Made by a program: the position numbers and the translations under genes. DNA of 64,000 nt from Anthoceros angustus (lineage: Eukaryota; Plantae; Anthocerotophyta), in contig MU008182.1 in assembly GCA_010909165.1 (NCBI GenBank), positions 868,001 to 932,000 of the forward strand. Reading direction: 5' to 3'. Positions 179-20,065 of this stretch are shown one piece after another. The first letter of the stretch is position 1; each line of letters begins with the position of its first letter. Under the pieces are notes generated by a model, which had not been told where the DNA came from, searched no databases, and saw nothing but the letters and a program-made list of their open reading frames with translations.

Positions 179-380
179 TTTTGCTTTTGATGCTGTTGTT
201 GCTGCTTGCAGTGCTACACACCCCATCACACCCCATCTAGGTCTAGGTAGCGATATAAGGACAGGATGCTTAAAAGCCAAGTTCTTATAAAGGCGTGTCC
301 ATTTAGCCTAAGCACAAGATGCTTACTTGCCAAGTTCTTATAGCGTGTGTGTTCATTTGACCTAATCCATTTTGACCGTC

Positions 381-510
381 AATTGAATGCCAATATGTAT
401 TTCATTTAGCTTGTTAACATGAATAATTGAATGCCAATATGTATTTCATTTAGCTTGTTAATATGAACAATTGAATGCCAATATGTATTTCATTTAGGTC
501 GTTAATATGA
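381..510. repeat. 44-bp tandem repeat, about 3 copies
   Basis: Unit aattgaatgccaatatgtatttcatttagcttgttaa(c/t)atgaa starts at 381, 425 and 469 with no spacers. Confidence 0.9.
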
Positions 511-1049
511 TCGTACCAAAACCTGAATTAAGAAGTTTGAGCAAAATAAATTTGAACCACAAGAAAAACATTTTATTATAAAACCAGGGCTAGAGAATGA
601 AAGCATTAAATAGTTACATCGTAACATGTTTTACTATCAGTGTGTGTGAGTTGAACATATATACTTGGCTTGTATTTGTATTTCGTACATACAAGAGGTG
701 TGCTACACATTCTATAAAACTGCTTTTCTATATTTATTCATCGAAATGAATTGGCTAGCTAAAAGTTTTAGGACCTATCTAGAAAGCCCTTACGAACGTA
801 GGCACTTGCATTTTCAACCACTCATAAATAGGTGGGTAGGTATCGAAGTCATATAGGAAGTAAAGCTAACAAATGTCGCGAATTTTCTCAGGGCACGGAT
901 CTGTGCGGCCCGCGAAACACCCAGATCAGCACCCGTAGTCGAAGAGTACGCCCGAAGTCCACGCGCCTGGCCCTCTCGTCCGGAGGATCTCGTCAAGGTG
1001 GTACCCTATCTGCATACATACTGCCCTATGACTTAACGACCTATCCTCA

Positions 1050-2016
1050 TTGCCATACCCAGAATGAAAATATCCACCGCTGGATTCAACTGGAATCCGA
1101 ACCTCATGAAACCGTGACACATTCCCTCCCGCCCCAGCTCAGGAAAGAGCGACCAGTCCCCTTTGCAGTCAAGCACCCTCGGTGCGTCCATACAGTCCAT
1201 AAGCGAATCTGGCTGTGGTGGACAGCACCAGCGCACTCGGCTGCATTCGCCACCTGACCATTCGTACCTGCGATGGAGAGAAACATTGGACTCGTGCCAT
1301 AATTCCTGGCTCTGGACCTGTTCCTGGTCTCTGACTCCCAGTGCGAGAGAGATGCCGCTTGTCGAAAACCGTGCCCCTTACACCAGCTTCAGCCTGAATT
1401 TTCATCAGAGACATGCCAATGCTCAGGTACGCTGGTCCTCACAAACGGATGCCTAACGAAGTACCCGAAAACCTTCCTCTTGAAGCTCAGCTTCTGTTTC
1501 CTGGTAGCTCGAAAGAAGTAGTCCACCAATCCATTAGCCACGACGTCGGCGGCCCTCTCCGCTCTGCAGCAGGCCATGATAAACCTCGCCACCACCCCTG
1601 CTGCAACATAGCGTGCACGCCTGTCAGCGACCTCGAGAGAAGGATCCCCCTCTGCACCCCCGGCAGTGCCAGCTACCTGAGGCCCGGACATGGCCGGCTC
1701 GTTTTCCAGCGCCTGCAATGCCCGGCCCTGGAGCGTCGACAGAGCCGCAGCCCTCTCCAGCATCGACACATTCAATGCCTCAGCTTCCGCCACTGCTACC
1801 GCTGTTTCTAGAGGCCTCCTGGCCCGGCTGGATCGCTTCTGCACGCCGTGCCCCTGCCTCCGGATTTGTAGAGACGACGGTGTGGATCGGCCTGCCCTCC
1901 GCAGCCTCCCTGAAATCCTTCTGTGCTCCATCTGTGACGGCAAAGGGAGTCCCGTGGGAGACCGGATCGTGAAGCGCTGCTCGTGCCGCAGGCGCCCTGA
2001 CTGCCCCATGCTCCAT
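1050..2016 (-). CDS. Possible spliced gene of unknown function
   Basis: GC-rich 206-aa ORF 1389-2009 lies downstream of a telo-box, with a polypyrimidine acceptor (tttctctccatcgcag) near 1268 and a further open frame. No domain recognised and boundaries are uncertain. Confidence 0.3.
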
Positions 2017-2056
2017 CAGGAGCCCAGGCTTTGGACGCCTCCCGCCGCAATCTCTC

Positions 2057-2064
2057 AAACCCTA
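2057..2064. promoter_or_regulatory. Telo-box AAACCCTA
   Basis: Exact motif at 2057-2064, at the GC-rich 5' end of the putative minus-strand gene. Confidence 0.45.
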
Positions 2065-2233
2065 GTAGGGTAGGGCAGGCAGGCCATTCGAATGCACAGA
2101 ACGAACGATCGGCGGCTCCCGCGATTATCCGATTCTCTGCTGCATATCTTGGGATGGATATAGGTTCTTACTGGGTCCCTCTTGCACGCGTGGAGAGATC
2201 ATCCACATCATAAAGTGACATTCTGCATAGAGT

Positions 2234-2855
2234 ATGTACATGTTGTGCGTTGGGCAGGCCATCGCCAAGGAAGCTTTGAGGAAACATTGCCCTGAACTTC
2301 TCGGCCTGCCACGTGCTCTGCATCCTGTACTGAATGGAAGTTCAATTGGCACCCAAGAAAGAGAAAGGGCTGGCTGCATATTGAACAATCTGAAGCCATT
2401 GGAAGATCCACATAGATGCAGGCTGACAGGTTTCTCAAGGGTTCTGGAAGCAAATCACAATTATTACTGGGTAACAAAGTTTGCTTTTATTCCGTTAGGG
2501 GTTGGACGGGTCACGATGCTTTTTGTGTGAATATTTGTTACACACAACTCATCTGACCCTTGCCGATCTGGTGTTAGAAGTTGGATGGGTTGAGAAGTCT
2601 GTTGGCCATATGGGACTTGAAGAGCACTTCAGTTTGCAATTAGAAGAATCGCTTAATAGTGCTTACCAAGGCCTAGAAATTCGGAGTAACGCCAAACTAT
2701 ACCAAGTACCTGCCTGTCCAGACGAGGGGAACGCCAGATGTAGCCTCGGGAAACATTATAACATTAGGAACGTTAACAATTCCCTCTACTCTTCTCACGT
2801 TCGGGTGCTTGCGATGCACACTAGACTTCTCAGAGGTCGAACTAGTAAAATCTAG
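2234..2855 (+). CDS. Possible small spliced gene of unknown function
   Basis: Two successive ORFs (2234-2530, 2502-2855) with a donor-like TGG|GTAAC. No recognisable domain. Confidence 0.2.
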
Positions 2856-3085
2856 GTTGTCTTCAATCTCGCACCCCCCGCCCGTTCAGTTCACTGCCTG
2901 TGTATCACAAGCTCCAGCTGCCGCAAGCCCGGACGAGAAACCACATCGAAAAGACGCAGCTGCCCGCAGATCCCTTCAATCCGTGCAGTTCTGCAAGCCC
3001 ACCAGGTGGAAAAAGGTGGTACAACCAACAAGGTGGCACCCGAAGGTGCCAAGGCTGGGTGAAGACTCGAATTCGGACAGGTTGT

Positions 3086-5129
3086 TCAAGATGCAGACAA
3101 TACTGCTTCACTGGCGGATTCCTGAGCATCCTTGGTCTTCTGACTTGATTCCTTCAATAACCCTACCTTTACAAGCAAAGCTTCAGTCTCTTCATTCGGT
3201 TTCACAGAATCCGCTTCCATCCGTTCTACGAATCCAGCAGGACGCTCTCCTGCATTAGCATAAGCTTGCAAAACTGCGTTGTAAACCCTTGGACTGCCAC
3301 GCTTATAGGTTCTCTTGATCTCCGCAAAGAGCTTCTCAGCGTTCTTATAGTCCCCTTTCTCCCCATGGCTCTCAAGGAGGACAGCCAGTGTTTGATACCA
3401 AGGTACGGTCTTCGACCGCATCGAACTTGTAGCAGTATGGTCCAGAACCTTCAGGGCTTTGTCTGTGTGCCCGCCTCGCAAATAGCTGGTCACAAGTATG
3501 TGGTTTGTCAGAGAGTTTCGGTTGATTTGTTTTTCAGCATCCAACTTCGCCACTAACTCCTCGGCCTTCTGCATATCATCCGATTTCTCCTTGTAAACAG
3601 ACAGTAGAGCATTGTATGCATGAATTGAGACCCCTCCCGGCTTGTTCTTCAGCTCCTCAAACAACTCCTCTGCTTTGCTCTCCAAGTTCAACTTCCCGTA
3701 GCACTGAATCATAGTACAAAAGCTTCGTGGTGGTACCCTGGGCCCTTTCTTCACCATCTCCCACACCCTCTCCACGAACTCCACACTTCCTAAGTTGGCA
3801 AAAGACCTCATGAGAATGTCATAAGCCACCAGCTTCCCTCGAGCAGGCATCTTGTCAAACGCATCCAACAATTCTCCAACTGTGTCCCATCTTTCCGCTC
3901 TAGCATAGGCTACCATTATGACAGCAGAAGTTGAAGCATCAGGAGATACACCGGCTTCAGCCTTCATTTCTTTATGGAGCTCCTCTACTTTATCGATGTT
4001 CCCTGCCTTGCTCTCCATATCAATGAGGATATTGTATGTGAACATGTCATAATTGACGCCTCGTTGTTTCATCTCTTCCAACACTTTCGGAACTTTCTCT
4101 GGCGATCCCTCATTCTTGTACATGATCACCATCTGATTGAACGGAAAGGCTGCCTTGGCGACGTCAGCCTCTTTCATTTCCTGGAAAAAGGCCTCTGCCT
4201 TTTTGGTACTACTAGCAGAGACATAGGCGGCCAGAAGGGCATTGTAAGCACCGGGGGTCTTCAAGGCCGCTTCACTTTTCCTGAAGGTCATTTCCGCCAC
4301 ACCTGTGTTGCGTAACTTGGAGTAGGTGTCTATCTGAACAGTAAGGAACGAGCCATCCTTCTCTTTCGGGTTCTTCTTCACATACCAATCAACCAGCTGC
4401 AGGAACAGGCAGCAGTAACGTTACAAACCAGCTGTGCAAACGCTACTTGAACCCTCACAAGCTACAAACTCCGCTAACAGCAAACTACAAGAAAAACGGA
4501 TGAGCGCCCAGCTTTCTAACCTCCAAGATCTGCGTGTACCGCTCTTGCTTCTTCATTGCCCGCACCACCGCGATCAGCTTAGGTTTATTGAGTTTGTTCT
4601 TCTTGCTTGACGCCTCCCATTTCTCCACGGTGCGCGAAACGAGACCATTGTCGCGCCTGGGAAGCTTACTCACCATGGAAATAAGTGCCCAACTGGAGGG
4701 ATTCGCTGCTTTGGTAGTCTTCCCGTCAGCATCCTCAGCGTCGTCATCATCCTCACCGTCTAAATCCTGAGCAGCGTCGCCGTCATTGTCCACCTCGTCA
4801 CTGCTCTTCTCGGCCTCCGACGAGAAGGCTCTCAGCCTCTGACCCGGCGCAGGCACATGAGAGAAGCCACATTTGGCTGAAGGCTTCCCAAAAATGCTGC
4901 CTGCACGAAACTTCCGCACCAAAGCTTCTTCGCAGCTTCTATTAGTAGGAGCAGCTGGCACCCCACCTTGGTCCGACGGGACGGCCCCGCCGCCGCAAGT
5001 GAACATCCTACCATTCAAATGGTCAGGAACAGGAGGAGGTCCACCGAGAGAATTGCCTTGGACGCTGCCCCTCCATTCCTGAGCCGGCCTGATGTTCCAA
5101 AACACAATCAGAAAGCAATGCCTAAGCAC
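3086..5129 (-). CDS. P-class pentatricopeptide repeat protein, probably organellar. Exons about 5129..4521 and 4396..3086; true start uncertain.
   Basis: Consecutive 35-aa P motifs (e.g. YNALLAAYVSASS, FTYNILIDMESKAG, YNALLSVYKEK). GT..AG intron 4520-4397 joins ILE|LVDWYVKK in frame. The ORF-track start at 5129 is GTG. Confidence 0.88.
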
Positions 5130-5570
5130 GAGGACAGGAAGGGCCAGCCCACTGATGCACGCAGAGGCTCAATTGCAATGCATTGACGGAGAGGACTAAC
5201 CTTCGAACGCAAGCAATACGTGCTGCTCTCCACACCCTCCACATACCTGCTGCCCTGCCAAGAAAATTCCACTCTGTCAAGACCCAGCTGCTGAGGCTCG
5301 CCGAGGCCAAGGCAACTGAGAATTGGAAAGATCACAACATACACCAACTTCCGTCCTTAAACCCTGCTAAACCCCTAGGGCAACCCCAGCACATCTCTCT
5401 CACAGTTCAAGTACAGCAAGACCGCCGGCGGCAAGTAGGGACAGGAGGCAGCTTACCCCAGCTGCTGGAAAGGCAATTCCGTCCGCGATGCGGATTAGCA
5501 AGCCTTACGAGCCGTCGCGGTGATGGCAACAACGGAAGCAGTCTCTGAGCACACAAAGGGAGGGGATCTT

Positions 5571-5584
5571 AAACCCTAACCCTA
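5571..5584. promoter_or_regulatory. Telo-box AAACCCTAACCCTA in a divergent promoter
   Basis: Lies between the 5' ends of the P-class PPR (-) and the DnaJ-like gene (+). Confidence 0.55.
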
Positions 5585-5643
5585 TTGTCGGGCAAGGTTT
5601 ACAGGAGCCTGTCCCTCGCGCGCCTCCAGCCAAATGTGGTGAA

Positions 5644-6056
5644 ATGGAGCCCATCACATCAAGCGAGGCGGCGGGCTTCGGGGTAGGAGCTTTTCTGTTG
5701 GCGGCTGCATTTGCAGCCCCGAAGGTTGATCTGTTCATAGCCCGGTCGCAGCGCAGGTTGAACCACCCTCTCTATTCTGTGGGATTACTGCCTTGGAGAT
5801 TGATGAATCGCAATGTGTGCCAATGTTGCTTGCATGCGTGAATGGTCACAGGGCGCTGAAACTGTGTGAAGAATGTGGGGGAGTGGCAATGCTGCCGTGC
5901 AAGGATTGTAAGGGGCTGGGCGAGCTCAGGCCTCCCTTTGCCTTTTTTCGCAAGGAGGTGCAGCCCAGCGCAGGGCGACCGGCTTCCTGTTCTTCGTGCC
6001 GGGGAACAGGCCAGTTGAGATGTACTTCCTGTGCGGGGGTCTCCAAGGGGGCCTAA
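5644..6056 (+). CDS. DnaJ-like CXXCXGXG zinc-finger protein (no J domain), 105 aa, join(5644..5756,5852..6056)
   Basis: 95-bp GT-AG intron gives RSQR|RALKLCEECGG. Motifs CEECGG, CKDCKGLG, CSSCRGTG, CTSCAG follow an N-terminal hydrophobic segment. Confidence 0.9.
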
Positions 6057-6121
6057 TGCATCCTGGGAATAAACACAGTGCATCGGAGACATAACCTGGT
6101 TCTGTGTCCCTAATTGTTGCA

Positions 6122-7879
6122 TCAGACATCATCGCTGTCCCGTCCTCGTTTCCTTGTTCCAGCAGGGTTCCCAAGCCCAAGCTTGTCGAGAAAGGCTGGC
6201 ATTTTCTTTGCGATGGTGCTTGGCGACGGTGCAGGAGACCATGGCACGGATCCGGTGGGGATCTCTTCTTCTTCTCCAGGAGGGGTGGCTGGTACGTGGA
6301 TCACAAGAGGTTGGTCGGCGCAGCAGCTACTTCTGGTGCAAAAGGAATCCCCGCATGGCCTATGTGCCGGTGTACCTCTTGGTGAGCCATTGAGTGAAGC
6401 ACTTGCTTCATCGACTGCATTTGGGCGCACATTCTGAATGTGTCCGCCTTGCAATGACGGCTCACGTCGGAGCACTCCACAATTTTCACACCATTCCACC
6501 CACTGCGACGACAGGTTGGCTGCACTGCATCGTAGCCGGTGTTGCGGTTGTGCAATGTGAAGTGTCAAGGAAAAATGATCACAGAAGCTCACGGAGCAGA
6601 CCCTGCATTCGAAGATGTGAGCCACCCTCTGCTGTGAATTTAGTGCCGGGACCTGGGAAGTGCAGTCGGACTCACACAGGGGGACAGTTCTGCCTCTCTG
6701 CCCGGTGAGATGACTTGCAAGATGAAGTTCCACCTGATGCGGTTTGCCCAGAATGGTTCCACATAAATGGCACCAGCCACTATAAGTCATCAGCTGCTGC
6801 GTCCATCGCTTCCAGTCACCGGCCGCTTGCGAAGCACAGCCCGGCCTGACTTCACGGCCCAGCAGAACTTTCTTGGAGGATGTCATTCTTGGATCAAACG
6901 ATGTCCGAGAACCATTGGGAGACGAAACTGTCCAGTCCCGAGGAGTGTTATCCCCATGGACGCTGTCTAGTACATGGCGAGCGAAAGCAAGCCAGCTCCT
7001 GCAAGCAATCAGACAGCAAGTGCACGTCCACCAACCTCGGGACTTGTGTTGTGAAGATGCAGGCCCCTGACCTCCTGGCAGCCCCCCGAGCACATCCTGA
7101 TGCCCTGCCGCGGACTCCACGTTGCCTGGTGCAGTTCTGGACGCGAGCATCTGCTCATGCCCTAGCGATCGCAAGTGAGCCTCTAGCTCCCAGACGAGAA
7201 GATACTTTCCGCAGGCTTGGCAAAAACACTGCCTCAGACGCTGCACATGTTCCGCGGACAGCAGATGGCCAACGAAATCATCCACCCCGTCACAGGCCTC
7301 CTCACACATGCTGCAGACTGGCTCAAACTCTGGATCCGAAGGTCTACTAGGAATCGCCGAAAACTCGACAACAAGGGCCTCAACCCGGGCCAGCGTATCA
7401 ACAGCAACTTCTGCCATGTGCGAAGGGCTGGCAAGATGCACTTCATACCCGAGCAACTTCGGGAACAACAGGGCACATGAATAACAGATCCATCCATGGG
7501 CCTCGACTTCCATCCCCGGCAAGATACAACTGCGTTTCATCCTTTTGGAGTGGCTCGGATTCTCCCTATGCAGTTTCACGGCCCGTGGCGTGTACAGGTC
7601 CACAGAGCAAGCGATGCAAACACCACGAAGACCGAAGAGCGCTTGTTTTACATGTTCCTTCCCAAGACAATGCAGTTCACAACCGAAAGGCACAGATGTC
7701 TCGCAGGTGGGGCATTCCTGCATGCCTTCTACACTTCCAGCTGCAACTGTGTCATCCATCTCCATCACATGACAAGGTCCTGACAAATACACACAATGAC
7801 TAGCTCCAGCCTGTGGAAATTGAGAGTTAGCAAAGCCTGATGTTGCATAATCGTCATCGTGTAAATACGGCAGAGACAA
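6122..7879 (-). CDS. Multi-zinc-finger protein with eight C2H2 U1/matrin-like fingers
   Basis: 585-aa ORF with 8 C-x2-C-x10-12-H-x3/5-H units, 7 with H-x5-H. The ORF-track start is TTG; first in-frame ATG is at 7765 (MEMDD). Confidence 0.75.
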   Translation of the reverse strand: MSLPYLHDDDYATSGFANSQFPQAGASHCVYLSGPCHVMEMDDTVAAGSVEGMQECPTCETSVPFGCELHCLGKEHVKQALFGLRGVCIACSVDLYTPRAVKLHRENPSHSKRMKRSCILPGMEVEAHGWICYSCALLFPKLLGYEVHLASPSHMAEVAVDTLARVEALVVEFSAIPSRPSDPEFEPVCSMCEEACDGVDDFVGHLLSAEHVQRLRQCFCQACGKYLLVWELEAHLRSLGHEQMLASRTAPGNVESAAGHQDVLGGLPGGQGPASSQHKSRGWWTCTCCLIACRSWLAFARHVLDSVHGDNTPRDWTVSSPNGSRTSFDPRMTSSKKVLLGREVRPGCASQAAGDWKRWTQQLMTYSGWCHLCGTILGKPHQVELHLASHLTGQRGRTVPLCESDCTSQVPALNSQQRVAHIFECRVCSVSFCDHFSLTLHIAQPQHRLRCSAANLSSQWVEWCENCGVLRREPSLQGGHIQNVRPNAVDEASASLNGSPRGTPAHRPCGDSFCTRSSCCADQPLVIHVPATPPGEEEEIPTGSVPWSPAPSPSTIAKKMPAFLDKLGLGNPAGTRKRGRDSDDV

Positions 7880-8044
7880 TCAAGAATCCAGCCACACACC
7901 AAGTCGGTCTCGGAAGCGACCACATATAGCGGGCAAGCCGTAGAGTAGTAGGTCGACTTGAGCCTACCTTTTGGGTCGCTGAACCCGCCAACTACTGTTG
8001 CTCATCCCCCCGACGGTTCGTTGCCCACCTCCCAAGAAACCACC

Positions 8045-8052
8045 TAGGGTTT
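8045..8052. promoter_or_regulatory. Telo-box (TAGGGTTT) upstream of the zinc-finger gene
   Basis: Exact motif about 170 bp upstream of the ORF. Confidence 0.35.
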
Positions 8053-8533
8053 CAGGGTAGTGTCTTGTGTAGGATATGAAGGTGTGATGTCTGATCCAAG
8101 GTGGAAAGATATGACATGTCTCATTCACGCTGGACGTGTTTACCTGCCTCTAGCACATCGTTGCAAAGAAGCATTGCTCCACAGCTCACTACATTCCCCA
8201 GCAGCCGGATCTAGCGACTTGTGATGTAAAAAGCTGTCCTCAACACAAGAGCCGTGTGCGAGCGTCTGCAGCCTTTCTGGTTGGCCTGCCAGAGTAATTT
8301 GTGCATTTGTGCATGTTTAGGACGTATCCTTCGGTCTAGAGTCTCAGAAAGTCTGTTCATCATCTCCTATACATGCAAAGAAAGCAGATTTTCCTCAGTT
8401 CCGCAGTGCATTGGCTCCGAAGTCCTCAACTCTACTGTCTGCGCCGTTATCAAATTCAGCACGCGAGCTTGACATGACAGGGTAATCTTAGCTCGTTGTG
8501 CAGGCCTACGTCCACCCTCTAAACAGCTGCAAG

Positions 8534-8591
8534 TCCTCATGCACTGTTCTCAATTCGACCCTTCCTCATGCACTGTTCTCAATTCGACCCT
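8534..8591. repeat. Perfect 29-bp tandem duplication just downstream of the aminoacylase stop
   Basis: tcctcatgcactgttctcaattcgaccct occurs twice in tandem. Confidence 0.9.
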
Positions 8592-8605
8592 TTCTATGAT
8601 GTCGC

Positions 8606-10321
8606 TCAGAATTCCTGATGTGGCTCCTCGGGAGAGAAGGATGTGAAAAGTGAAATAATTTCCTCGTATACCTTAATGCCTTTGAGGTACTCCTTGACGT
8701 TCAGAAACTGTCATTCAACAAGACCATGGATGAGATGAAGGTAAGGCTTCGACAGCAAGCACACTGTTGGGTGAATTGCAGGGCAAACCTCATTATGGTC
8801 GTGGAGCAAAATAGGTGTGTTAGCCATGGGAGAGAAACCAACAGCGGGAATCCCCTCGTCCCTCACGTAGCGAGAATCTGTTGCAGCTGGGAAAATTTCT
8901 GGCTTGCCAAGCTTGCCGCCAGCTTTCGTCACTGCTTCCTGAAACAAGAGCCACCATGGATTCGAATTGTCCAGGACTGTTATTGGAATCTCTCCACGTC
9001 TGTCTCGCACAGGTGTCTTCTGCTGGAACTGCCAGGGCAAAATCATGGTTAAGGAATCAACAACACTAGTAGGAAGATGGATGAGCTTCAGAGCAAAGTA
9101 GGCTGATGGCTGTGAAGATGCTGTGCGGGTAAACTTGCCTCAAACGTAAGATTCCTCGAGGCAGGTGCCCACTCCTCTGATATGATTCTCTCGAGCTCTT
9201 CAGGGTTAGCATAAGGTGGCACTCTTATATCAAATCCTGCTTCTGCTTCAGACGGCTGCAGGTTCATCACAAACCCCTGAAAAACCCCAGTCATGTCACA
9301 GCACGTTACCACTGAAAAGAGGACAATTGCAGGGCATCTTTGCAGAACATGACTAACTGGGATTGCATACCGTAGGAGACGGCGTGCCAGACTTCAGGAA
9401 CACTGGATTCACTGAAACAACGTCACCCTCTGCAGCTTTCCCTGCCTTGACGAGGTTGAACTGTTCAGCTCTGTACTTGACGATGAGCTCCAGGCTCTTC
9501 TCTAAGTTTTCGATCGCAGAGTTGTCATACAGTTTTGACCCATGCCCTGGTGCCCCCACCGCTTTGATCATGAGCCACCATGGAGACCGCTCACCATTAA
9601 ACACACGGTAGTTTTCGGTCGGAGATGCGAGGCCCTCATCCAGAGCGAAGCCCACATTCAGCCTCTTGAACTCGGGTGAAGACACAAACTTCTCAGCACC
9701 ATCATGTCCACCGATCTCTTCATCCGGGACAAACGAAAGATGAACAGAACGTAGAGGCTTGAACCCTCTCTGTTTCAGATTCCGAACTGCTTCCAAGTAC
9801 TGCATGCCCACGCACTTCATGTCCTGAGATCCCCGTGCGAAAACATCCCCCTGCTCTGTTCGAGCAGCAGAGAAGGGATGGTGCACCCATTTCTGCTTCT
9901 CGGAAGGTACCACATCAACATGTGAGTTCAGAAGAATGGACGGCAAGGATGGATACTTGCCCTTCCAAGTCACCAGCACCACAGGCTTGCCCTTCACAAA
10001 CTCGATCGTTGTTGCCTCTAACCCACCAACCGACTCCGCTTGAGCCAACAGGAAGGCAGCTGATTTCGAGTAGTCAGGATTCGGATGAGCTGTGTCTATT
10101 TGCAGATATGACCTGAACCTCTCGATAGCCTCTTCCTCCTGCTCACCGTGCCTCAAGGCATCAGTATGGTGCAGCTGCAAGGCAACTAAGCAGAGGACGA
10201 GCACGGACACAACACAAGCCGGGCGGTCATAGCCACCCCTCTTCACAAGAATTCCCTTCATCTTTTCACCCCCTTCCGAGGACAACAGCACAGTGTGTCC
10301 TCCCAGGAGGACACGTTTCAT
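8606..10321 (-). CDS. ACY1: Aminoacylase-1 (peptidase M20A), exons 10321(or 10261)..9371, 9276..9139, 9028..8789, 8707..8606
   Basis: Motifs LLNSHVDVVP, ARGSQDMKCVG, FVPDEEIGG, LDEGLASP, GHGSKLY, PAATDSRY, LLHDHNE|FL. All junctions are in frame; intron 2 is GC-AG. Signal-peptide-like N-terminus. Confidence 0.95.
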
Positions 10322-10678
10322 ACTGCACCGCCCGCGCACAGGATGCGCTGATGGTTTATAGAAAATAATGTTGTGCTCCGCTTGATGTATGAGGTGTGGA
10401 TCACATCATCTGACAAAGATGCAGCTATAGCTGAATTGCAGCAAGCCCCACTTGTTTTTGCTTTTGCTCTGCTATTCTCGCTCTGTTGATTTGAAGATTT
10501 TTCTTTTTCAAGTCTTGTGTTGTGCAATGGTGTGCTTGTGTGGCAGTGGTCGAGGTGGATTCCAGGGACGGAAGGATGAAGGAACTTGGGGCACTAGCTA
10601 CAGACACAGGTGTCACGTCAGCTCTGATTGTGCAATGGGACTGGGCAAAGTGATGTCATCAGTTCGCTTCTGGAACAG

Positions 10679-13600
10679 TTAGTGCAGGTGACTGGCCTCA
10701 ACCATAGCACAAAGCAGCATTCGGATTTTCGAGATGTAGGCCGTGGCAGTGTTACAATCTACGCAAACACGCAGATTTTTCACCATAAGTCTCGAGGTGC
10801 ATTCGGGTGTATTGTAGAGGGCATGGGCAATAGCAAGCTTCTTGATCTGCCCAGACAGCGAGCAGTGCACATTTGATACAAATTCTTCTTTGTTCATTCT
10901 GGAAAGGAGATGTTGCAGTCTTGCTTCACTCCTGGGATGCTTCTTTTCTCCAACCGAAAACGTATGCACCAGTCCGTACATGTCAGTCCACCAAGTCTGG
11001 CCTGGCTGCTTCCATGCCCTGATCCTCATTCTCCTCGCCTGCATCTCTTGTGCCTGCTCCCACATCTGGGCACCTCTATATATGTTCGACATCAACACAT
11101 ATGCTGCAGGATCTTGACAGTCTATGGTGACTGCTCCATGAAAAGCATGGCGGCCCACCTCCACATTGCTCCACTTTTGACAAGCACCCAATAGAGTGTG
11201 CCAAACTGCAGCATCTGGCAGAGAAGGCATTGTCCTTACCAACGCAAGTGCCTCATCCAGTAGGCCTGCACGGCCCAGGAGATCGACCATGCATGTGTAG
11301 TGCTCGACAGTAGGACTGATGCCATAGTCTCTGCGCATAACCTCAAAGTACTCTTGCCCCTTGGTCACTAGACCAGTATGACTGCAAACTGTTAGAACAC
11401 TAAGGAATGTGGCACCGGTTGGCTGAACGCCATCCTCTCTCATTCTGTCAAACAAGTGAAAGACCACATCACTCCCTCCTTGTCGCATGTAGCCTGCTAT
11501 CAGTGCATTCCAGGAGACCACGTCTCGTTCCAACAGGGTCTCAAATACCTGCTGTGCATCAACCATGCTACCGCATTTTCCGTACATGTTTATCAAACTA
11601 CCAGCTATAAGCACATCGGCTTGAAGTCCTTGATCTTTAATCTGGGCATGAAGCTGCCTTCCAAGATGCAAGGCTGCCAAATCTGCACATGGCTGCAGGA
11701 GACACAAAAATGTCACAGAATCGGGTGCAGCAAAGCCTTCTTGCTCCATAGCCCTGTAAAGACCAAGGGCTTCCTGCCCCATGGCCTGCTGGCAGTATCC
11801 TGCAATCATGGCATTCCATGTCACCACGTTTTTCTGACTAAGCCCGTCAAACACACCCCGGGCATCCTCTAGGCTGCCACACTTTGCATACATGTTTACC
11901 AAGCTGCTGGCTAAAACCACGTCAGCTTGAAGTCCTCGTTCTCTAATCTGTGCATCAAGCTGCCTCCCCTTCTCCAAAGCCTCTGTGCCCACAGCTGCAC
12001 AAGCCTGCAGGAGGCACACGAACGTCAGAGAATCAAGTACAACACTTCCCTCGTCGTGCATAGCCACGTAGAGACTAAGGGCTTGCTGCCCCATCCCCTG
12101 CTGGGTATACCCTGCTATCATGGCATTCCATGTCACAACGTTCTTTTGATCAAGTTTATCAAAAACAAAATATGCATCCCCTAAGCTTCCGCACTTTGCA
12201 TACATGTTCACCAAGCTGTTGGCTACAACCACATCAGCTTCAAGACCTCGTTCTCTTATCTCTGCATGAAGCTGCTTCCCCTTCTCCAAAGCTGGGGTGC
12301 CCACACTTGCACATGCCTGCAGGAGAGACACAAAGGTCACAGAAGTAGGCGCAGCCATGCCTTCTTGTTGCATGATACTGAACAGATGAAGGGTCTCCAG
12401 CCCCATGCCCTTCTGAGAATATCCTGCCATCATGGCATTCCACGTCACCACATCTTTCTGAGGAAGTCCGTCAAACAGCCTCTGAGCATCTTCCAAGCTG
12501 CCACACTTTGCATACATGTTAACCAGACTGTTGGCTACAAACACGTTGTCTTCAAGTCCCCGTTCCCTAATTTGTGCGTGAAGCTCCTCCCCATTCACCA
12601 AACCCAGGGTTCCCTCACTGGCACATGCTTGGAGGACACCCACAAATGTCACAGAATTGGGTACAACAACACCTTCCTCTTCCATATCCCTGTAAAGGCC
12701 AAGGGCTTCTTGACCCATGCCCTGCTGGGAGTATCCTGCTATCATGGCACTCCACGTCACAACATCTTTCTGAGGGAGCCCGTCAAACACTCTTAGAGCG
12801 TCTTCTAAGCGCCCACACTTTGCATACAGATCCACCAAGCAACTAGAGACAAACTTATCCCCTTCAAGCCCACTAGCCAACACATCAGCATGCACTTGTT
12901 GCCCAGATTTGAAGTCAGCTCCACTTGCACACGCCTGCAGGGCTGCTACAAACACGTGACCATCTGGCTTCACACCTGACCCTTGCATCCGATCGTACAG
13001 CCTTATGGCTTCCTTGCCTTCTCCAAGCTTAACATGCGCAGAAATTATGGAAGACCACATGAAGGCATCTGGCTCTGGAACCACGGTAAACACATCCTTG
13101 GCTTCCTGCAACCTGCCATGAGAAGCATACATTCGCAAGATGTGATTGCACAGGAACGTGTCCAGCTCGAACTCCTTTTTCACCGAGAGAGCATGGACGC
13201 GGCGGCCCAGAGCGAGATCCCTCTTCACTACACATGTCTTCAGGACAGTATAAAATACATTGTTGGAAATACAACTATCCGTCTGCACCAGAATTCCCAG
13301 AGCCTCGACAGCCTCGCTAACCCGGCCCTGTTCACATAGCTTGCTTACCTGTTCAGCCGTTAATCCCATTTCGTATCCTGCAGGCATGCACGGGCGACCA
13401 TCACCCATGAAGCGCCAGTCAGGATGACGACCCATCTGCATATCCAGAGCACCCAGATGCGCATCCTGAGCTGGGTTGTCACACTGGTCTAGCCAGAGGA
13501 CCTCCCGGCACTTCCAAAGTGGGGGGTCCTGGATGCGCTCGCTGGGAGATACGTCCCCAGCCACTTGCCCGCTTGGATTGGCTGCCTGTCTTGCGAAGGG

Positions 13601-13690
13601 GCTATCAGATCCCAACCGTTGATTCCAGGAAGTCAGGTGAACGGGATCTCTTCCCAGAACACCTCCAGACAGCCATAGCTCGAAGAGCAC
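10679..13690 (-). CDS. PLS-class PPR protein (PLS1) with E domains and a degenerate DYW:WW domain
   Basis: Six S-P-L triplets, then P2-L2-S2, E1/E2 and WKQPGQTWWTD. HSEKLA is replaced by QIKKLA, KNLRVCVDC is retained and there is no DYW end. First in-frame ATG is 13441. Confidence 0.9.
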   Translation of the reverse strand: MLFELWLSGGVLGRDPVHLTSWNQRLGSDSPFARQAANPSGQVAGDVSPSERIQDPPLWKCREVLWLDQCDNPAQDAHLGALDMQMGRHPDWRFMGDGRPCMPAGYEMGLTAEQVSKLCEQGRVSEAVEALGILVQTDSCISNNVFYTVLKTCVVKRDLALGRRVHALSVKKEFELDTFLCNHILRMYASHGRLQEAKDVFTVVPEPDAFMWSSIISAHVKLGEGKEAIRLYDRMQGSGVKPDGHVFVAALQACASGADFKSGQQVHADVLASGLEGDKFVSSCLVDLYAKCGRLEDALRVFDGLPQKDVVTWSAMIAGYSQQGMGQEALGLYRDMEEEGVVVPNSVTFVGVLQACASEGTLGLVNGEELHAQIRERGLEDNVFVANSLVNMYAKCGSLEDAQRLFDGLPQKDVVTWNAMMAGYSQKGMGLETLHLFSIMQQEGMAAPTSVTFVSLLQACASVGTPALEKGKQLHAEIRERGLEADVVVANSLVNMYAKCGSLGDAYFVFDKLDQKNVVTWNAMIAGYTQQGMGQQALSLYVAMHDEGSVVLDSLTFVCLLQACAAVGTEALEKGRQLDAQIRERGLQADVVLASSLVNMYAKCGSLEDARGVFDGLSQKNVVTWNAMIAGYCQQAMGQEALGLYRAMEQEGFAAPDSVTFLCLLQPCADLAALHLGRQLHAQIKDQGLQADVLIAGSLINMYGKCGSMVDAQQVFETLLERDVVSWNALIAGYMRQGGSDVVFHLFDRMREDGVQPTGATFLSVLTVCSHTGLVTKGQEYFEVMRRDYGISPTVEHYTCMVDLLGRAGLLDEALALVRTMPSLPDAAVWHTLLGACQKWSNVEVGRHAFHGAVTIDCQDPAAYVLMSNIYRGAQMWEQAQEMQARRMRIRAWKQPGQTWWTDMYGLVHTFSVGEKKHPRSEARLQHLLSRMNKEEFVSNVHCSLSGQIKKLAIAHALYNTPECTSRLMVKNLRVCVDCNTATAYISKIRMLLCAMVEASHLH

Positions 13691-13849
13691 AGCTGAATCT
13701 TGTGGTGGATGTACGAGCCCAAAATATCTGAGGCTTTTTTTGCATCGTCTTCAGACATTTGAAAATGTGTGTGAGCTCAATTTTCTCTTCGATGAGGAAA
13801 GACGTAGTGCTTTCTATGCGGATCAAAGGAGTGTCGCGAGATTGGATCG

Positions 13850-16288
13850 ATGGAAGGTTCTCTATTTTGTGTGAGTCATTCCTGCGTGTTGTTCAGGGCA
13901 CCCGATCAGCAATGCGTCTCCAAATCCGCATGCAGAGCGCCCGCAACAGATTCCGCTCAAACATCTCTCTGGGTGGCCTGCCATGCTCACTTCTCGCAAC
14001 TTGATGGATTAGACGCCGCTCGGGAGATGGAAGTTCCAATGTCAATGTCGGACGCGAGCTTCCGCACCTCGGAGGATGTGTTTGGGAAGGTAGGAGCGTC
14101 TTGAGTGGATCGTTCAGTTTATGGTTGTTGTGTAGTTGGCAGTGCTCAGTTGTGCACGGGTGCTGCTTCTGCAGAGGAAGCCGAAGTCTCTTAAGTTCGG
14201 AGAAAGAGACGGTCTAGGAAGGGCAAGTGGCCTATCCAAGGTACCGTCTGTGGAGCTAGGTGAGAAACTGGCAATGTTTGACAGCGAGCCTCTGTTCTGT
14301 TGCGCTTGTGTTGCCTTCTTAGGCGACGGATTGTTTTCTTGCAGATATAGGAGGACTCGTGAAGAGGGAACGGCAGAAGTTGCTGTGGCAGGAGTTCTTT
14401 CATGACCCTGAACAATGGCTGGACAACAGACGGATTAAGGTATTCCTGACCGGCATTTGCATGCATTTCAGCGATTTGACCAATGTATGGAGAGCATAAG
14501 GTGGCTCATGATTCCAAGTTCATGTGCTGGGTGTTGAAAACCTGTACTGGTAGTTTTGCAGAAGAGTCCTCAGCATCCTGACTTCAAGCACAAGATCAAG
14601 CCTGAGGCCCTATGGATAGACAACAAGTTCAATCCCCGTTGGATAAAAACAAAGCTAGCCGTTCTGGCTAAAGAGGATGATGACGTTGTGCCCAGTCCAG
14701 GCCTCGTTTGTATGGTGCCAAGCAGGGTGATGATGAGGTGCGAACGCTGTGTGTCCTTAAGCTATTGCTGTGTGGAAAGACGGGCAAGCTGTGAACAATT
14801 GGAATCTGTGAGAACAAACTCTCAGGCCTCACCTGTGCTTTTCAAAGCTGATCACTTCGCACCTCCTGCAGAACCGAGTTCAATTTGGAGGATGCTGAAG
14901 AAGTTAGGCGACTCTGTGAAGAGGGGAGACTACAGGAGGCTCTGCATGATATACAGGTTATTAATCTGCAAGGAAACATCAATGCTGCTATGGAGAGCTA
15001 CTGGCACCTTCTACAGGGTTGCACCAAAATGAAGAGTCTAGTTCATGTGTCAAATGTGCATTCTTCGATAGAAGACGCAGGGTTTGGCTCGTCCCGGTAT
15101 CTGGGTAATGCTCTGGTAAATAGCTATGCTCAATGTGGATGCCTGGCTGAGGCACTTTTGGTGTTCAACAAGCTCTCGCAACGAACTGTCATATCCTGGA
15201 CCGCACTTATCTCAGGTCATGCAAAGAGTGGAGAAGGTCTTCGAGCCGTGGAACTTTACCGAAAGATGCAACGGGAAGGTGTGAAGCCAAACTCCTACAC
15301 CTTTGTTGCTATATTACAAGCTTGTGCCAGCACAGGAGACCTGGAGCACGGCAAGCAGGTCCATGCTGAAGTCGTCTGCGATGGGCTTGAATCCGATCTG
15401 TTTGTCGGCACTGCATTGGTGGATATGTATGTCAAGTGTGGAAGCATGGTAGATGCACAGGGAATTTTTGACAGAATGTCACGGCATGATGTGGTCTCCT
15501 GGACGACCATGATAGCAGGCTACTCCCAGGAAGAACAGGGTGACAAGGCTTTGCAACTCTATGTCCAGATGCAAGAGGAAGGCACGATCCCGGACGATTT
15601 TGTCTTTGCCAGTGTTCTCAAAGCCTGCAGCAGCCTCGCAGTGAGGGAGGAAGCAACATGTGTAGAGGGCAAGTTACTGAAACTCAGATCCCTACAAAAA
15701 GGTAGGGACATTCACGCCGAGATTGTCCGGAGGGGCTATGAATTCGATCTTATTGTAGGCACCAGCATAATTGACATGTACTCAAAGTGTGGGAGCATGG
15801 TGGAAGCACAAAGAGTGTTCGATGCATCATCCAAGACCCACGTGGGGGTTTGGAATGCTCTCATCAGGGGGTATGCTGAACAGGACCAGTGCCTCATCGT
15901 TTTGCAGCTCTACTCTCAGATGCAATCGGCAGGGGTGAAGCCAGACTGTTGGACGTTTCCCAGCTTACTCCAAGCATGTATTAGCCTGTTAGAAAGTGAA
16001 GAGGCTCTTGTTCATGGATCGCTGACACCAGATCCCCGGCAGGCAGGCAAGGAAATCCATGCCGAAATTATCAAGGAGGGCTATGAGTCAGACATCGTGG
16101 TTGGCAACGCTCTAGTGCAAATGTATGCGAAATGTGGGAACATGGTAGATGCTCAAGTGGTTTTCGATTCGTTGTCCCAGCGTGATGCGCTGTCATGGAA
16201 AGCAATGGCAGCAGGGTATGCCCAGCAAGGGCAGATCGAAAAGGCTCAGCTCTTCAATACTGGACCGGAAGCTGAAGGGACCAGCTAG
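13850..16288 (+). CDS. PDF-motif (OSB-type) + PLS PPR fusion protein, 671 aa, join(13850..14089,14175..14240,14323..14439,14562..14737,14872..16288)
   Basis: Four GT-AG introns (85, 82, 122, 134 bp) give one open frame of 2016 nt. Exons 3-4 encode LWQEFFHDPEQWLDNRRIK|KSPQHPDFKHKIKPEALWID. Exon 5 encodes PLS repeats with no E/DYW domain. Confidence 0.75.
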
Positions 16289-17008
16289 GGCTTGGTAGAT
16301 ACATATCTGTACTGTAAGTAGACATCCCTCGCTGCCAGCATCTGTACATAGATATGTATGTGCAATCAAACGAGATGCGTAACTTGATGCCTGAGCGCGG
16401 GATGCCACAATCCTTCTGCACCCTCCCATTTTCGGACAGAAAAACAGCCATCGCCCTCGCAGAACTAACCGGTGGCTAGTTTCGGAGGGTTTGCCTCTAG
16501 TAGCAGGGCTCGTGGGTGTGTGAAATGCAGCAAGGTGGTTGCGTGGGAAGAGCTCTCGCAACTCCGATTGCTTTGCCTAGTACATAGCGTGTGGCCTCTT
16601 TGGAGGGATATGCTACTCTCTGCTGCTGTGGCTTCTCAACCAGTGCATCCACTGCTTCTACGCTGACCTGGTGCTCCACATGGTCACGCATGCACGCTCC
16701 CCACGCTAGGATCCTGGTTGTTCTGGGCCTTCCCTCTCCTTAGTTGATGGAAAGCTGAAAGCACGTGAAAAGAACCACTCGTTTCGTGAAGCTTATATAA
16801 GGATCTGTTAGCCTGCCTAGAATGCCTGCTTGCCACATAAAGAGCAGGACCAGGGGAATAGCTGTGCCTAGGACTACTGCACTCCTGCAGAGCACTCAGA
16901 GAGTGAGAAGCTTCAATCACGGGCCACCATCACAGACCTAGTAGCTGACACCACGCTCAAGAGGGAGAAACCACCACTTTGCCCACCTTATTCTAGGAAG
17001 ATTCCCTT

Positions 17009-17397
17009 GCCTTGCATCTCCGACCGAAAACTACCGTGTATTTCATGGTGAGCGGTCTCCACAGTAGCTCACTCAAAGCGGTGTGGGCACCAGGGCATGG
17101 GTCAAAACTGTATGACAACTCTGCAATCGAAAACTTAGAGAAGAGCCTGGAGCTCATCGTCAAGTACAGAGCTGAACAGTTCAACCTCGTCAGGACAGGG
17201 AAAGCTGCAGAGGGTGACGTTGTTTCAATGAAACCAGTGTTCCTGAAGTCTGGTACGCCATGTCCTACGGTATGTAATCCCAGTTAGTCATTGTGATGCA
17301 CCTGCAGCCTTCTGAAGCAGAAACAGGATTCGATATAAGAGTGCCACCTTATGCTAACCCAGAAGAGCTCGAGAGAATCATCGATCGAACTTTGAGG
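17009..17397 (+). pseudogene. Inverted partial duplicate of the aminoacylase gene
   Basis: Near-identical to the reverse complement of about 9635-9140 (PGHGSKLYDNSAIENLEKSLELIVKYRAEQF...). Most of intron 1, including its acceptor, is deleted, and both gene ends are missing. Confidence 0.9.
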
Positions 17398-18581
17398 TTG
17401 TTCCTCACAGTGATCATTGTATTATCCTTTGCATATCAAAAAGACTAATGAATTCCTAGCTGGTCCCTTTTGCAATCAAAAGAGAGGCCAGCTGCTCTCA
17501 CAGTTGGCAGACCTAGTACGAATACTGTGGGCTAAGTAAAATACTACCCTCTCGTACCGCTCGAGCAATGACTGGTCTGTAAAGCAGATTATATACCGTA
17601 TGGGGCTATGGATTTGGGCGCCGTTTGAGGAATAGTTAATTTTTTTTAAAGGATGAAATTTTAACACGGTATAAAATATTTTCCCTAATTTCAATAGCAA
17701 CGTAGTATATTTTTCTTCAAATCGGCTCTTTGTAAATAATAATATACTAAACCAGCGCCGCCTTGCGGCGGATAGCCCAAGCCGAAACCAGAGAAGAAGT
17801 TTTCTATTCTACCGTGCTAAGCTTATTGGTTGCTATCAATGTCTTCATGTCGAACATCCATTTAGAAGAATGCGCACTGGACTGCAATTGCGGTCGAGTT
17901 GCGCAATCAGTTACAATGATCCAGCAAGGTCGGCAAGCAAGACTTCAGGCCCGTCTTCAAGCAGTGCCTGCGGCGCATGAGCAGGCGGTAATCACCGATT
18001 CTGGCGGACAAGAGGAGGATGACCCCGATGTGACACCCTGTGAGGACGAACACCTTACAAGCGCGCGGACACCTCCAGAAATCCACGTTGCTGATGGGGG
18101 GGCCATTCCGCATGTGGCTCATGAGGGTTGAGTCTCAAGTTATACTGTGATGGTAGACCACCCATGTGTGGTACCATACGCATTTGCGTCGCATGTAATC
18201 GCACAACTTCACTGGTCTCTACATGTATCTATGTTTTTCAATCTATCTGAGAGCGAGCGTTGTGACATAGCACGAAACCCTGCGAGCAATGGTGACAAAA
18301 TTCTGTTATATTTCTGACAATCTCCGCAAGTTCCGCAACACTAGTCATCTATGGACTCAAAAAGTGTGTCACCTGGACTTGGATCTAATTTCTTCAGATC
18401 CAATCAAAAACCTAAGAACTACCCGAACATCCACTTAGAAGAAATTCGCCGCCTTTGTCCTATGACAACAGCTGGCCTCTTCTTTTTAAGTCTTTCAGAG
18501 ACTAACGGGCGGGCTCCCTAAATTCACTTTTTATCAATGTAAGCTTTTGACGCTCTAATTGGCTTATCTATGGAATACCGA

Positions 18582-18879
18582 TCTGGTCACGCGGCATCCA
18601 CATTTTTTTAGGGTTGTGGACAGAAAGAAATAGTCCCGCCGCCGCATACGGCGGAACTATTTCGGTATGTCACGCATGACCACATCGGTCGGGGCTGCGG
18701 CCCCCCGGTGTCCCGATGTCGTCAACCTACCCCATGATGCGCGAAAAGATTTCACAATACACAGAAACTTTTCTTCTCTTGGGTTTAGGATTGCGTTTAG
18801 GTCATTTGCATTGCCGCGCCATTGCGGCATGCAATATTCCATCTCTGGTCACGCGGCATCCACATTTCTTTAGGGTTGT
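18582..18879. repeat. 37-bp direct repeat pair, 262 bp apart
   Basis: tctggtcacgcggcatccacattt(t/c)tttagggttgt at 18582 and 18844. Confidence 0.8.
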
Positions 18880-19875
18880 CAGCGGTTGCGTTAGCAATCC
18901 GCCTCATATTCCGTCTCCTAAGAGACTCAGGGTCACTCTGAGCGGGCACAGATGCAGCATGAGGAGCAGGTGTTGGATGTCTGGGCGGTGGTAAGCGGTG
19001 GATGCCAAATTCAAATGACTATCATCTTCTGGTCTCAAGCTGTCCCATACATCCAACTGCAAGCATAACAGAAGCATCTTAGTAGTCAACCACACTGAAA
19101 CGTAGGGATTGCACCCCTAGCCTCTCCTTACTGCACATACAGTGAAGGCAACACGTCTAAGCGGAGGATTTACGTTCAGTTTCTCGGCCAACGTGGGCCA
19201 TACTTGCAAACAAAAATTTGTGTATGTGTGTCTTGCCCACCTGTTTAACATGTATGTGTGGTGATTGGATTGAAACCTTAAAACCCTAAACAAGAAAACA
19301 TGTGCATGACACAATCGGAACACCATGCCTATGATCGTGTCATACAAAGTTTTTGCCCCGCGTACGAACCTACAGAAGCTGATGTGGCACGTATTATTCG
19401 TGTATTGTATGGAAGTATCTGAAAGATGTCGTGGCATATTTCTGTAGCGCACACCCAAAAAAAAGAAAGTCACACACACGCTCCCGTATGACCTGATCGG
19501 TATTCCATACTTATTATACATGCACTGGACCAGGAAGTCCACCCGAGCCATGGCAACCCACAAACAATCGGTCAAGCTTTTTCGATTTAGCGGCCTTGGT
19601 TCGCTTCCTTCATGGGGTGCTAGGAAGTGTTAACCCCTTAACGACCGGCCCGTCCGGGCATTTTCTAAGGAAAATAGTGAGAAAGTAATTATTACCTTTT
19701 TTAGCGAATTATTCCATTTTAAATTCGAAAAAATATGGCTCATGATCCTCCAAGGATGCTCTTTCCAACGAAGTATGCCTTGGCATATTCCATGAAAAAA
19801 CGGAAGAGCTATGACGTGAGGAACGGCTATGGCGATTCTCGAAAGGGCACCTCTCTCTGCAGTTTGTGCAATTGG

Positions 19876-20065
19876 CTAAACCAGACGAAGTACATGTAGG
19901 GTCATTCGAAAGCCACCTTCCAAGGTAGTGTCCCATGCGAAAACCAAACACAACAAACCAAACCTCCACGCTAAACCAGACGAAGTGCATGTAGGCTCAT
20001 TCGAAAGCCAGCTTCCAAGATAGTGTCCCATGCGAAAACCAAACACAACAAACCAAACCTCCACG
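19876..20065. repeat. 95-bp tandem duplication
   Basis: ctaaaccagacgaagt...aaacctccacg at 19876 and 19971 with a few substitutions. Confidence 0.9.

What the first reader, a model, noticed from the sequence alone, without database searches (positions are those of the whole stretch)
13850..16288. Spliced fusion of an OSB-type ssDNA-binding PDF motif to PLS-class PPR repeats
Seen: five exons joined by four canonical GT-AG introns of 82-134 bp, the size of other introns here, give one 671-aa frame. Exons 3-4 encode KLLWQEFFHDPEQWLDNRRIKKSPQHPDFKHKIKPEALWIDNKFNPRWI. Exon 5 is a PLS array whose own ORF has no ATG start (TTG, with a stop at 14849), so it needs upstream exons. Known: the PDF motif (W.D.R..K..P..PDFKHK...EALW) is the ssDNA-binding module of plant organellar OSB proteins, where it normally accompanies an SSB-like OB fold; PLS repeats are sequence-specific organellar RNA binders. 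Inference: a protein coupling ssDNA binding to specific RNA recognition, for example at R-loops, nucleoids or co-transcriptional editing. I am not aware of this architecture being characterised.
Basis: partly seen in the sequence, partly recalled or inferred. Interest (0 to 1): 0.85.

Follow-up and report, generated by a model that had tools for sequence, protein, structure and literature searches.

The report
PDF-domain PPR gene, transcribed, truncated
[quoted passage not shown] I found no paper on this pairing, although it is old and common in seedless plants, and this copy lacks the editing enzyme part.

Summary
Five exons (13850-14089, 14175-14259, 14345-14439, 14562-14737, 14872-16288) joined by GT-AG introns of 85, 85, 122 and 134 nt give one 670-codon frame. 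A spliced RNA contig of the same organism, with no mismatches, joins all five exons.

Exons 3 and 4 encode a true PDF domain:
- It keeps all 12 conserved columns.
- It matches named OSB1, OSB2 and OSB3 proteins.
- Its predicted fold matches only the PDF regions of Arabidopsis OSB1-4.

Exon 5 encodes four P-L-S triplets plus a cut P motif. There is no E or DYW domain and no OB fold.

The fusion is not a one-off. N-terminal PDF plus PLS-PPR, often with E or DYW, occurs in lycophytes (at least 30 genes in Diphasiastrum), ferns, Sphagnum and Riccia. These genes share a phase-0 intron at the same place inside the PDF. I found no paper describing the pairing. Earlier notes of this scan reached the same family-level reading on other pieces of this genome.

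Caveats:
- The own-species contig uses an acceptor 8 nt upstream (14553), which breaks the frame inside the PDF. Two related species use the in-frame site.
- Function is untested.
- A decaying copy is not excluded.

The parts
13769..13849 (+). 5' leader, from the start of the RNA contig. It holds an upstream ATG at 13792 that opens a 70-codon ORF overlapping the main ATG.
   Evidence: X1 contig piece starts at 13769; ORF scan of the spliced transcript
13850..14089 (+). Exon 1 coding part, aa 1-80. It is Ser/Ala/Cys-rich with no family match, so it is a possible organelle-targeting region (inferred).
   Evidence: splice 14089/14175 in the X1 contig
14175..14259 (+). Exon 2, aa 81-108 plus one base. 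It is basic and diverged in relatives, where it is 9 nt longer and still in frame.
   Evidence: X1 pieces, and the X2/X6 joint with 92 letters between
14345..14439 (+). Exon 3. It carries the first half of the PDF domain (14371-14439) and ends with the conserved Lys, phase 0.
   Evidence: same intron position in Sphagnum and Diphasiastrum genes
14440..14561 (+). Intron 3 (GT..AG, 122 nt). An alternative acceptor AG at 14552-14553 adds 8 nt and shifts the frame.
   Evidence: X2 and X6 joint 14439/14562; X1 contig 14439/14554; consequences computed
14562..14737 (+). Exon 4. It carries the second half of the PDF domain (14562-14657) and then a linker, ending in phase 2.
14738..14871 (+). Intron 4 (GT..AG, 134 nt), between the PDF linker and the PPR array. 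A homologous phase-2 intron is present in L001.
   Evidence: joint 14737/14872 in X1 and X6; L001 intron 898-972
14872..16288 (+). Exon 5 coding part. Four P-L-S triplets (aa 209-642, from about 14900) are followed by a cut P motif (aa 643-670) and the stop at 16286-16288. There is no E or DYW domain.
   Evidence: Pfam PPR_2 8e-52 and PPR 4e-49; motif map; no E/DYW remnant downstream
16289..16629 (+). 3' untranslated region, unspliced in the RNA contig
   Evidence: X1 contig runs to 16629

Best explanation
The locus is a transcribed member of an old subfamily of PLS-class pentatricopeptide-repeat proteins, for which I found no published description, that carry an OSB-type PDF domain at the N-terminus. 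The in-frame mRNA would encode a leader of about 116 aa, then one PDF domain (aa 117-171), a linker of about 35 aa, and 12 PPR motifs (four P-L-S triplets) ending in a cut P motif. Shown here: the gene structure, the splicing, the identity of both domains, the absence of an OB fold and of E/DYW, and the wide distribution of the same design with a shared intron. Inferred: the protein is sent to an organelle. The PPR tract reads a short RNA sequence, because six of seven P/S motifs keep canonical code pairs at positions 5 and last. The PDF domain adds sequence-independent binding to single-stranded nucleic acid on the 5' side of the PPR footprint, or tethers the protein to the nucleoid. Lacking a deaminase, this copy would act as an RNA binder or accessory specificity factor, not as an editing enzyme.
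For: Gene model and frame. RNA contig of the same organism joining all exons with 0 mismatches. Related species B and C splice 14439/14562 and join exon 4 to exon 5, with in-frame differences only (exon 2 is 9 nt longer; 7 letters are replaced at the end of exon 4). A genomic-type contig of species B keeps introns 3 and 4 (X21). PDF identity: the exhaustive search gave 579 proteins at E<=1e-3, among them named OSB1 of Populus, OSB3 of Euphorbia and Chenopodium, and OSB1/OSB2 proteins carrying PF00436. All 12 invariant or nearly invariant columns are kept. The AF2 model has pLDDT 94.9 and matches only the PDF regions of AtOSB1-4, TM 0.81-0.83. Family: 16 of the best 150 representatives are N-terminal PDF plus PPR. 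At least 30 Diphasiastrum genes, and Sphagnum genes with DYW, share the design. Other named members come from Selaginella, Ceratopteris, Adiantum, Pteridium and Riccia. The phase-0 intron lies at the same codon in the window, in Sphagnum L002 and in Diphasiastrum L003. L001 is colinear at 47% identity and has a homologous phase-2 intron.
Against: The single assembled transcript of the window's own species uses acceptor 14553. That gives a 161-aa product stopping inside the PDF, with a separate 480-aa PPR ORF downstream. An upstream ATG at 13792 precedes the main start. The PPR array is short and ends abruptly, with no E/DYW and no remnant downstream, unlike full-length relatives. No protein identical or near-identical to this model turned up in the protein collection. 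Targeting, nucleic-acid binding and any RNA target are untested. OSB PDF domains are reported to prefer ssDNA over RNA (PMC4166229).
Confidence: 0.65

Rival explanations
1. This is a decaying, still-transcribed copy. A once full-length PDF-PLS-E-DYW gene lost its 3' part, and in this species it is mostly spliced out of frame, so no functional fusion protein is made here.
For: The own-species contig uses the frameshifting acceptor. The array is cut inside a P motif with no E/DYW. There is an upstream ATG in the leader. Earlier notes of this scan report many broken PDF-PPR copies elsewhere in this genome (not tested here).
Against: The five-exon frame is fully open over 670 codons. All 12 conserved PDF columns are intact. 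Canonical PPR code residues are kept in six of seven P/S motifs. The truncated structure, the in-frame splice and the in-frame indels are shared with two related species. Logan contigs keep only one variant, so an in-frame isoform in this species is not excluded.
Confidence: 0.27
2. Alternative splicing at 14553/14561 is regulatory and makes two products: a PPR-only protein started at the internal Met (aa 191) from the +8 isoform, and the PDF-PPR fusion from the in-frame isoform.
For: Both acceptors are AG sites 8 nt apart, and each is seen in some run. The +8 transcript holds a 480-aa ORF covering the whole PPR array.
Against: The internal ATG lies about 660 nt into the transcript behind several ATGs and a 161-codon ORF, so it would be reached poorly. 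The Met pair near it is replaced in species B, where 7 letters differ at 14729-14735. No read counts are available.
Confidence: 0.06
3. The gene model is an artefact: unrelated ORFs are linked by chance GT-AG pairs, or the PDF exons belong to another transcript.
For: Many alternative GT/AG combinations keep the frame open upstream of exon 3.
Against: Spliced contigs from three species join the exons exactly at the predicted sites. The PDF profile is split colinearly at the intron. The same architecture and intron recur in distant plants.
Confidence: 0.02

Closest known systems
[quoted passage not shown] 2006 as cited in PMC6963530 and PMC4166229)
   Same: They share the roughly 50-aa PDF domain: 37-53% identity to AtOSB1-4, the same predicted fold (TM 0.81-0.83, rmsd 1.2-1.4 A), and all conserved Trp, Asp, Arg, Lys and Pro-Asp-Phe positions.
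   Different: Here there is no SSB-like OB fold (no PF00436 hit, no match to the poplar OSB1 OB region). The PDF is N-terminal rather than C-terminal and is followed by PPR repeats. It is split by a phase-0 intron, whereas both PDFs of poplar OSB1 lie in one exon.
PLS-class PPR RNA-editing factors (PLS-E-DYW)
   Same: It has alternating P, L and S motifs with canonical code residues. Close relatives in the same subfamily carry E, E+ and a complete DYW deaminase, for example Sphagnum P0267.
   Different: This copy stops inside a P motif after four triplets and has no E or DYW domain. It carries an N-terminal PDF domain, which is not among the accessory domains listed for PPR proteins in the Physcomitrium review (RRM, LAGLIDADG, SMR, NYN, CBS, SAP; PMC9459714).
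Unannotated PDF-PPR proteins of seedless plants (e.g. Diphasiastrum KAJ7231026.1 = P0217, Selaginella XP_024517303.1 = P0243, Sphagnum CAM6033764.1 = P0267, Riccia KAL3675360.1 = P0268)
   Same: Same order of parts: leader, one to three PDF domains, a short linker, then a PLS array. Same phase-0 intron inside the PDF. Identity within the PDF is 47-62%.
   Different: Most relatives are longer (640-1370 aa) and end in an E motif or DYW. The window's protein is among the shortest and has no C-terminal domain, like the Riccia protein.

Membership tests
OSB family | One or more PDF motifs (about 50 aa with a Pro-Asp-Phe signature) | tested here: met
   E 1e-17 to 1e-44 to named OSB proteins; all 12 conserved columns kept; fold match to AtOSB1-4 only
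OSB family | Central SSB-like OB-fold domain (PF00436-type) | tested here: not met
   No Pfam hit in exons 1, 3 or 4 at E<=1. phmmer with the poplar OSB1 OB region gives nothing. Only 116 aa precede the PDF.
OSB family | Preferential binding of ssDNA; mitochondrial or plastid location | not testable with these tools
   Needs EMSA and localisation experiments
PLS-class PPR proteins | Tandem P (35 aa), L (35-36 aa) and S (31 aa) motifs | tested here: met
   PF13041 8e-52 and PF01535 4e-49. Motif map of four P-L-S triplets at aa 209-642; two L motifs carry 14-16 aa inserts.
PPR-E/DYW editing factors | C-terminal E1/E2 motifs and DYW cytidine deaminase domain | tested here: not met
   No PF20431 or PF14432 hit. 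The ORF stops at 16288 inside a P motif. There is no remnant in 16000-20000, and the transcript runs unspliced to 16629.
PDF-PPR subfamily (defined here and in earlier scan notes; no paper describing it was found) | PDF domain(s) N-terminal to a PLS array in one reading frame | tested here: met
   same layout in 16 of 150 representatives
PDF-PPR subfamily (defined here and in earlier scan notes; no paper describing it was found) | Phase-0 intron after the conserved Lys in the middle of the PDF | tested here: met
   Window AAG|gt..ag|AAG, Diphasiastrum L003 AAG|gt..ag|AAG, Sphagnum L002 AAG|gt..ag|GCA

The most novel reading that the evidence does not exclude
The PDF domain is a general organellar module for single-stranded nucleic acid. 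On PPR proteins it either binds RNA just 5' of the PPR footprint or anchors editing and processing factors to ssDNA of the transcribing nucleoid. RNA recognition in seedless plants would then be physically coupled to the DNA template. This mechanism was lost or replaced in seed plants, and truncated PDF-PLS proteins such as this one act as deaminase-free specificity or tethering factors.
Probability: 0.2. Interest if true: 0.8.

Novelty: new variant of a known kind. Interest (0 to 1): 0.55.

Why it matters
PPR editing factors are among the largest gene families in seedless plants, and their accessory domains are taken to be well catalogued. Many of them, across hornworts, mosses, liverworts, lycophytes and ferns, turn out to carry a conserved, well-folded N-terminal domain otherwise tied to ssDNA binding and mitochondrial genome stability. 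That opens a testable question: is organellar RNA recognition helped by, or coupled to, single-stranded DNA or RNA binding through PDF? It also means that OSB surveys requiring an OB fold miss much of the PDF domain's history. This locus adds direct transcript evidence for the junction, conservation in three related species, and an example without a deaminase.

Tried and rejected
- Searching the protein collection with the PPR exon was swamped by generic PPR proteins. It returned no self or orthologue protein.
- A word-based search with the exon-4 ORF and a region limit found no candidate.
- Pfam and PDB sequence searches with the joined 55-aa motif gave nothing. There is therefore no curated model for PDF.
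- Foldseek against PDB and VIA-align wide (best Z 2.7) found no solved structural relative.
- I looked for other PDF copies in the window, including upstream of the four other PPR genes. None was significant. A weak look-alike at 13472-13504 in the neighbouring PPR gene is not significant (E 16).
- I looked for an E/DYW remnant downstream of the stop and found none.
- I tried to read Zaegel et al. 2006 by DOI, a guessed PMC id and a PubMed id. It is not held, so I could not check whether that paper mentions PDF outside OSBs.
- The tree of 55-aa PDF motifs is poorly resolved. It shows clustering of PPR-linked PDFs (8 changes against 19.4 when shuffled). It neither proves nor excludes a single origin; the shared intron is the better argument.
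- dN/dS between the three species could not be computed, because contig sequences are not returned and read laying is capped at one call.

Full report
**Observation**

The region was read directly. I enumerated GT donors and AG acceptors. One model with strong sites keeps the frame open from ATG 13850 to TAG 16286-16288. Its exons are 13850-14089, 14175-14259, 14345-14439, 14562-14737 and 14872-16288. Its introns are 85, 85, 122 and 134 nt, and it encodes 670 aa.

The PPR ORF alone begins at a TTG (14885) and has an in-frame TGA at 14849, so it does need upstream exons. Pfam finds PPR_2 (8e-52) and PPR (4e-49) on exon 5 and nothing on the other exons.

**Transcript evidence**

- Run X1 comes from the same organism (0 mismatches). 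It holds a single 2443-nt contig made of 13769-14089, 14175-14259, 14345-14439, 14554-14737 and 14872-16629. All four introns are removed and the PDF exons are joined to the PPR exon.
- Runs X2 and X6 come from two related species that are a few percent diverged. They show joints 14439/14562 and exon 4 to 14872.
- Their differences keep the frame. Exon 2 is 94 nt instead of 85 nt. Seven letters are replaced at 14729-14735.
- A contig of run X21 (species B) covers 14405-15015 with both introns in place. The genomic structure is therefore shared.

There is one complication. The X1 contig enters exon 4 at 14554, using the AG at 14552-14553, which is 8 nt upstream of the predicted acceptor. That isoform stops after 161 codons inside the PDF domain. 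It leaves a separate 480-codon PPR ORF starting at an internal Met. Logan contigs keep one variant only, so the share of the in-frame isoform in this species is unknown. The leader also holds an upstream ATG at 13792.

**Identity of the N-terminal motif**

No Pfam family and no PDB sequence matches the joined 55-aa motif.

An exhaustive phmmer search of 1.84 billion representatives found 579 proteins at E<=1e-3 and 122 at E<=1e-10. Many of them carry 2-13 copies. Named hits include:
- OSB1 of Populus;
- OSB3 of Euphorbia and Chenopodium;
- OSB1 and OSB2 proteins carrying the SSB domain PF00436.

In a 79-sequence alignment the window's motif keeps every invariant column (D18, F31, W50). It also keeps every nearly invariant column: W6, W16, R20, K23, P29, D30, L40, W41 and P48.

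AlphaFold2 on that alignment gives a confident small alpha/beta module, with pLDDT 94.9. Its only Swiss-Prot AFDB matches are the PDF regions of Arabidopsis OSB1-4, at TM 0.81-0.83. No solved structure resembles it.

The literature describes PDF as a 50-aa module that is responsible for ssDNA binding in OSBs, and sufficient for it in OSB1. It is reported to prefer ssDNA over dsDNA or RNA (PMC6963530; PMC4166229). So the motif is a true PDF domain. The protein is not an OSB, because no OB fold is present.

**The PPR part**

Residues 209-642 form four P-L-S triplets. Two of the L motifs carry inserts of 14-16 aa. A thirteenth motif, a P, is cut after 28 residues by the stop.

Reading the positions of the established PPR code directly, six of seven P/S motifs have canonical pairs: T/N, T/D, T/D, N/D, N/D and N/T.

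There is no E or DYW domain, and no remnant of one within 3.7 kb downstream. The transcript continues unspliced into a 3' UTR of about 340 nt.

**The architecture elsewhere**

Of the best 150 representatives, 16 have one to three N-terminal PDF domains followed by PPR repeats. Named members come from:
- Diphasiastrum, Selaginella, Ceratopteris, Sphagnum and Riccia;
- Adiantum;
- Pteridium.

A region-limited search from one Diphasiastrum member returned about 30 further Diphasiastrum genes on different chromosomes with PPR plus E motif. One of them also has DYW. The search also returned Sphagnum genes with PPR-E-DYW. Sphagnum P0267 is a complete PDF-PLS-E-DYW protein.

All named members are seedless plants. 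Seed-plant hits in my sample are OSBs or other proteins.

L001 is a transcript contig from another run. It has in-frame PDF exons and a retained 75-nt phase-2 intron at the position of the window's intron 4. With that intron removed, it gives an open frame of more than 1141 aa. That frame is 47% identical and colinear to the window's protein, and it runs on into an E domain.

The intron inside the PDF lies after the same conserved Lys, in phase 0, in three genes:
- the window;
- Sphagnum (L002);
- Diphasiastrum (L003).

Poplar OSB1 has both of its PDFs in one exon.

A tree of the short motifs is weak. It does show the PPR-linked PDFs clustered, and it does not exclude one origin. The shared intron argues for an old, common origin of the fusion. 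It also shows that 14561/14562 is the ancestral acceptor.

**Literature**

No paper in the library joins the PDF motif with PPR or DYW. A 2026 survey of 182 OSB genes does not mention PPR. The Physcomitrium PPR review does not list PDF among accessory domains. The founding OSB paper could not be read, so a passing mention there cannot be excluded.

Earlier notes of this scan, on other pieces of the same genome, reached the same family-level conclusion. I consulted them after my own searches, and they agree with my results.

**Interpretation**

Shown:
- a transcribed five-exon gene whose in-frame mRNA encodes a leader, a PDF domain, a linker and a PLS array;
- membership in an old PDF-PPR subfamily;
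- no OB fold and no deaminase.

Inferred:
- organellar targeting;
- sequence-specific RNA binding by the PPR tract;
- added non-specific binding of single-stranded nucleic acid by the PDF domain.

PPR tracts bind RNA in parallel orientation, which is established knowledge. An N-terminal PDF would therefore lie 5' of the recognised sequence.

Without E or DYW this copy cannot edit by itself. It may be an RNA binder or accessory factor, or a truncated copy on its way out.

I put about 0.65 on an expressed, functional fusion protein and about 0.27 on a decaying copy. An artefact is excluded.

**Verdict**

The fusion is common in seedless plants rather than unique. No publication describing it was found.

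Noticed in passing
window 10679-13690 (- strand): A 1003-codon PLS-PPR ORF lies head to head with this gene; its 5' end is about 80 nt from the start of the RNA contig at 13769. Its C-terminus looks like a degenerate DYW domain: Cys-Val-Asp-Cys-Asn where CxDCH is usual, and the ending is not DYW. It has no significant PDF piece.
   Followed up: partly
window 47687-50335, 52832-55147, 55436-57748 (- strand): Three more long PLS-PPR ORFs, each about 45-52% identical per triplet to this gene's repeats. None has a PDF piece nearby.
   Followed up: partly
window 13792-14004: An upstream ATG in the transcript leader opens a 70-codon ORF in another frame that overlaps the main start codon. It could lower translation of the main ORF.
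   Followed up: no
L003 164-310, 858-1004, 1384-1515 and 4280-4900: In the Diphasiastrum locus, further PDF-like pieces lie upstream of the annotated start. A separately annotated 206-aa E+DYW product lies just downstream. The public gene model may therefore split one longer PDF(n)-PPR-E-DYW gene.
   Followed up: no
P0174 (Coptis chinensis, 1526 aa) and P0194 (1063 aa): PDF motifs also occur in front of a kinesin motor domain (three copies at about residue 190 onward), and in a 1063-aa protein whose other domains were not examined. Either PDF has been shuffled onto other partners as well, or these are merged gene models.
   Followed up: no
P0268 (Riccia sorocarpa, 458 aa): A marchantiid liverwort has a PDF plus PLS protein without E or DYW. 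From my own knowledge this group lacks organellar RNA editing, which hints at a role of PDF-PLS proteins outside editing.
   Followed up: no
window 15631-15690 and 15988-16035 (aa 446-496 and 563-611): Two of the four L motifs carry inserts of 14-16 residues between helix A and helix B. The neighbouring PPR genes show similar inserts.
   Followed up: no
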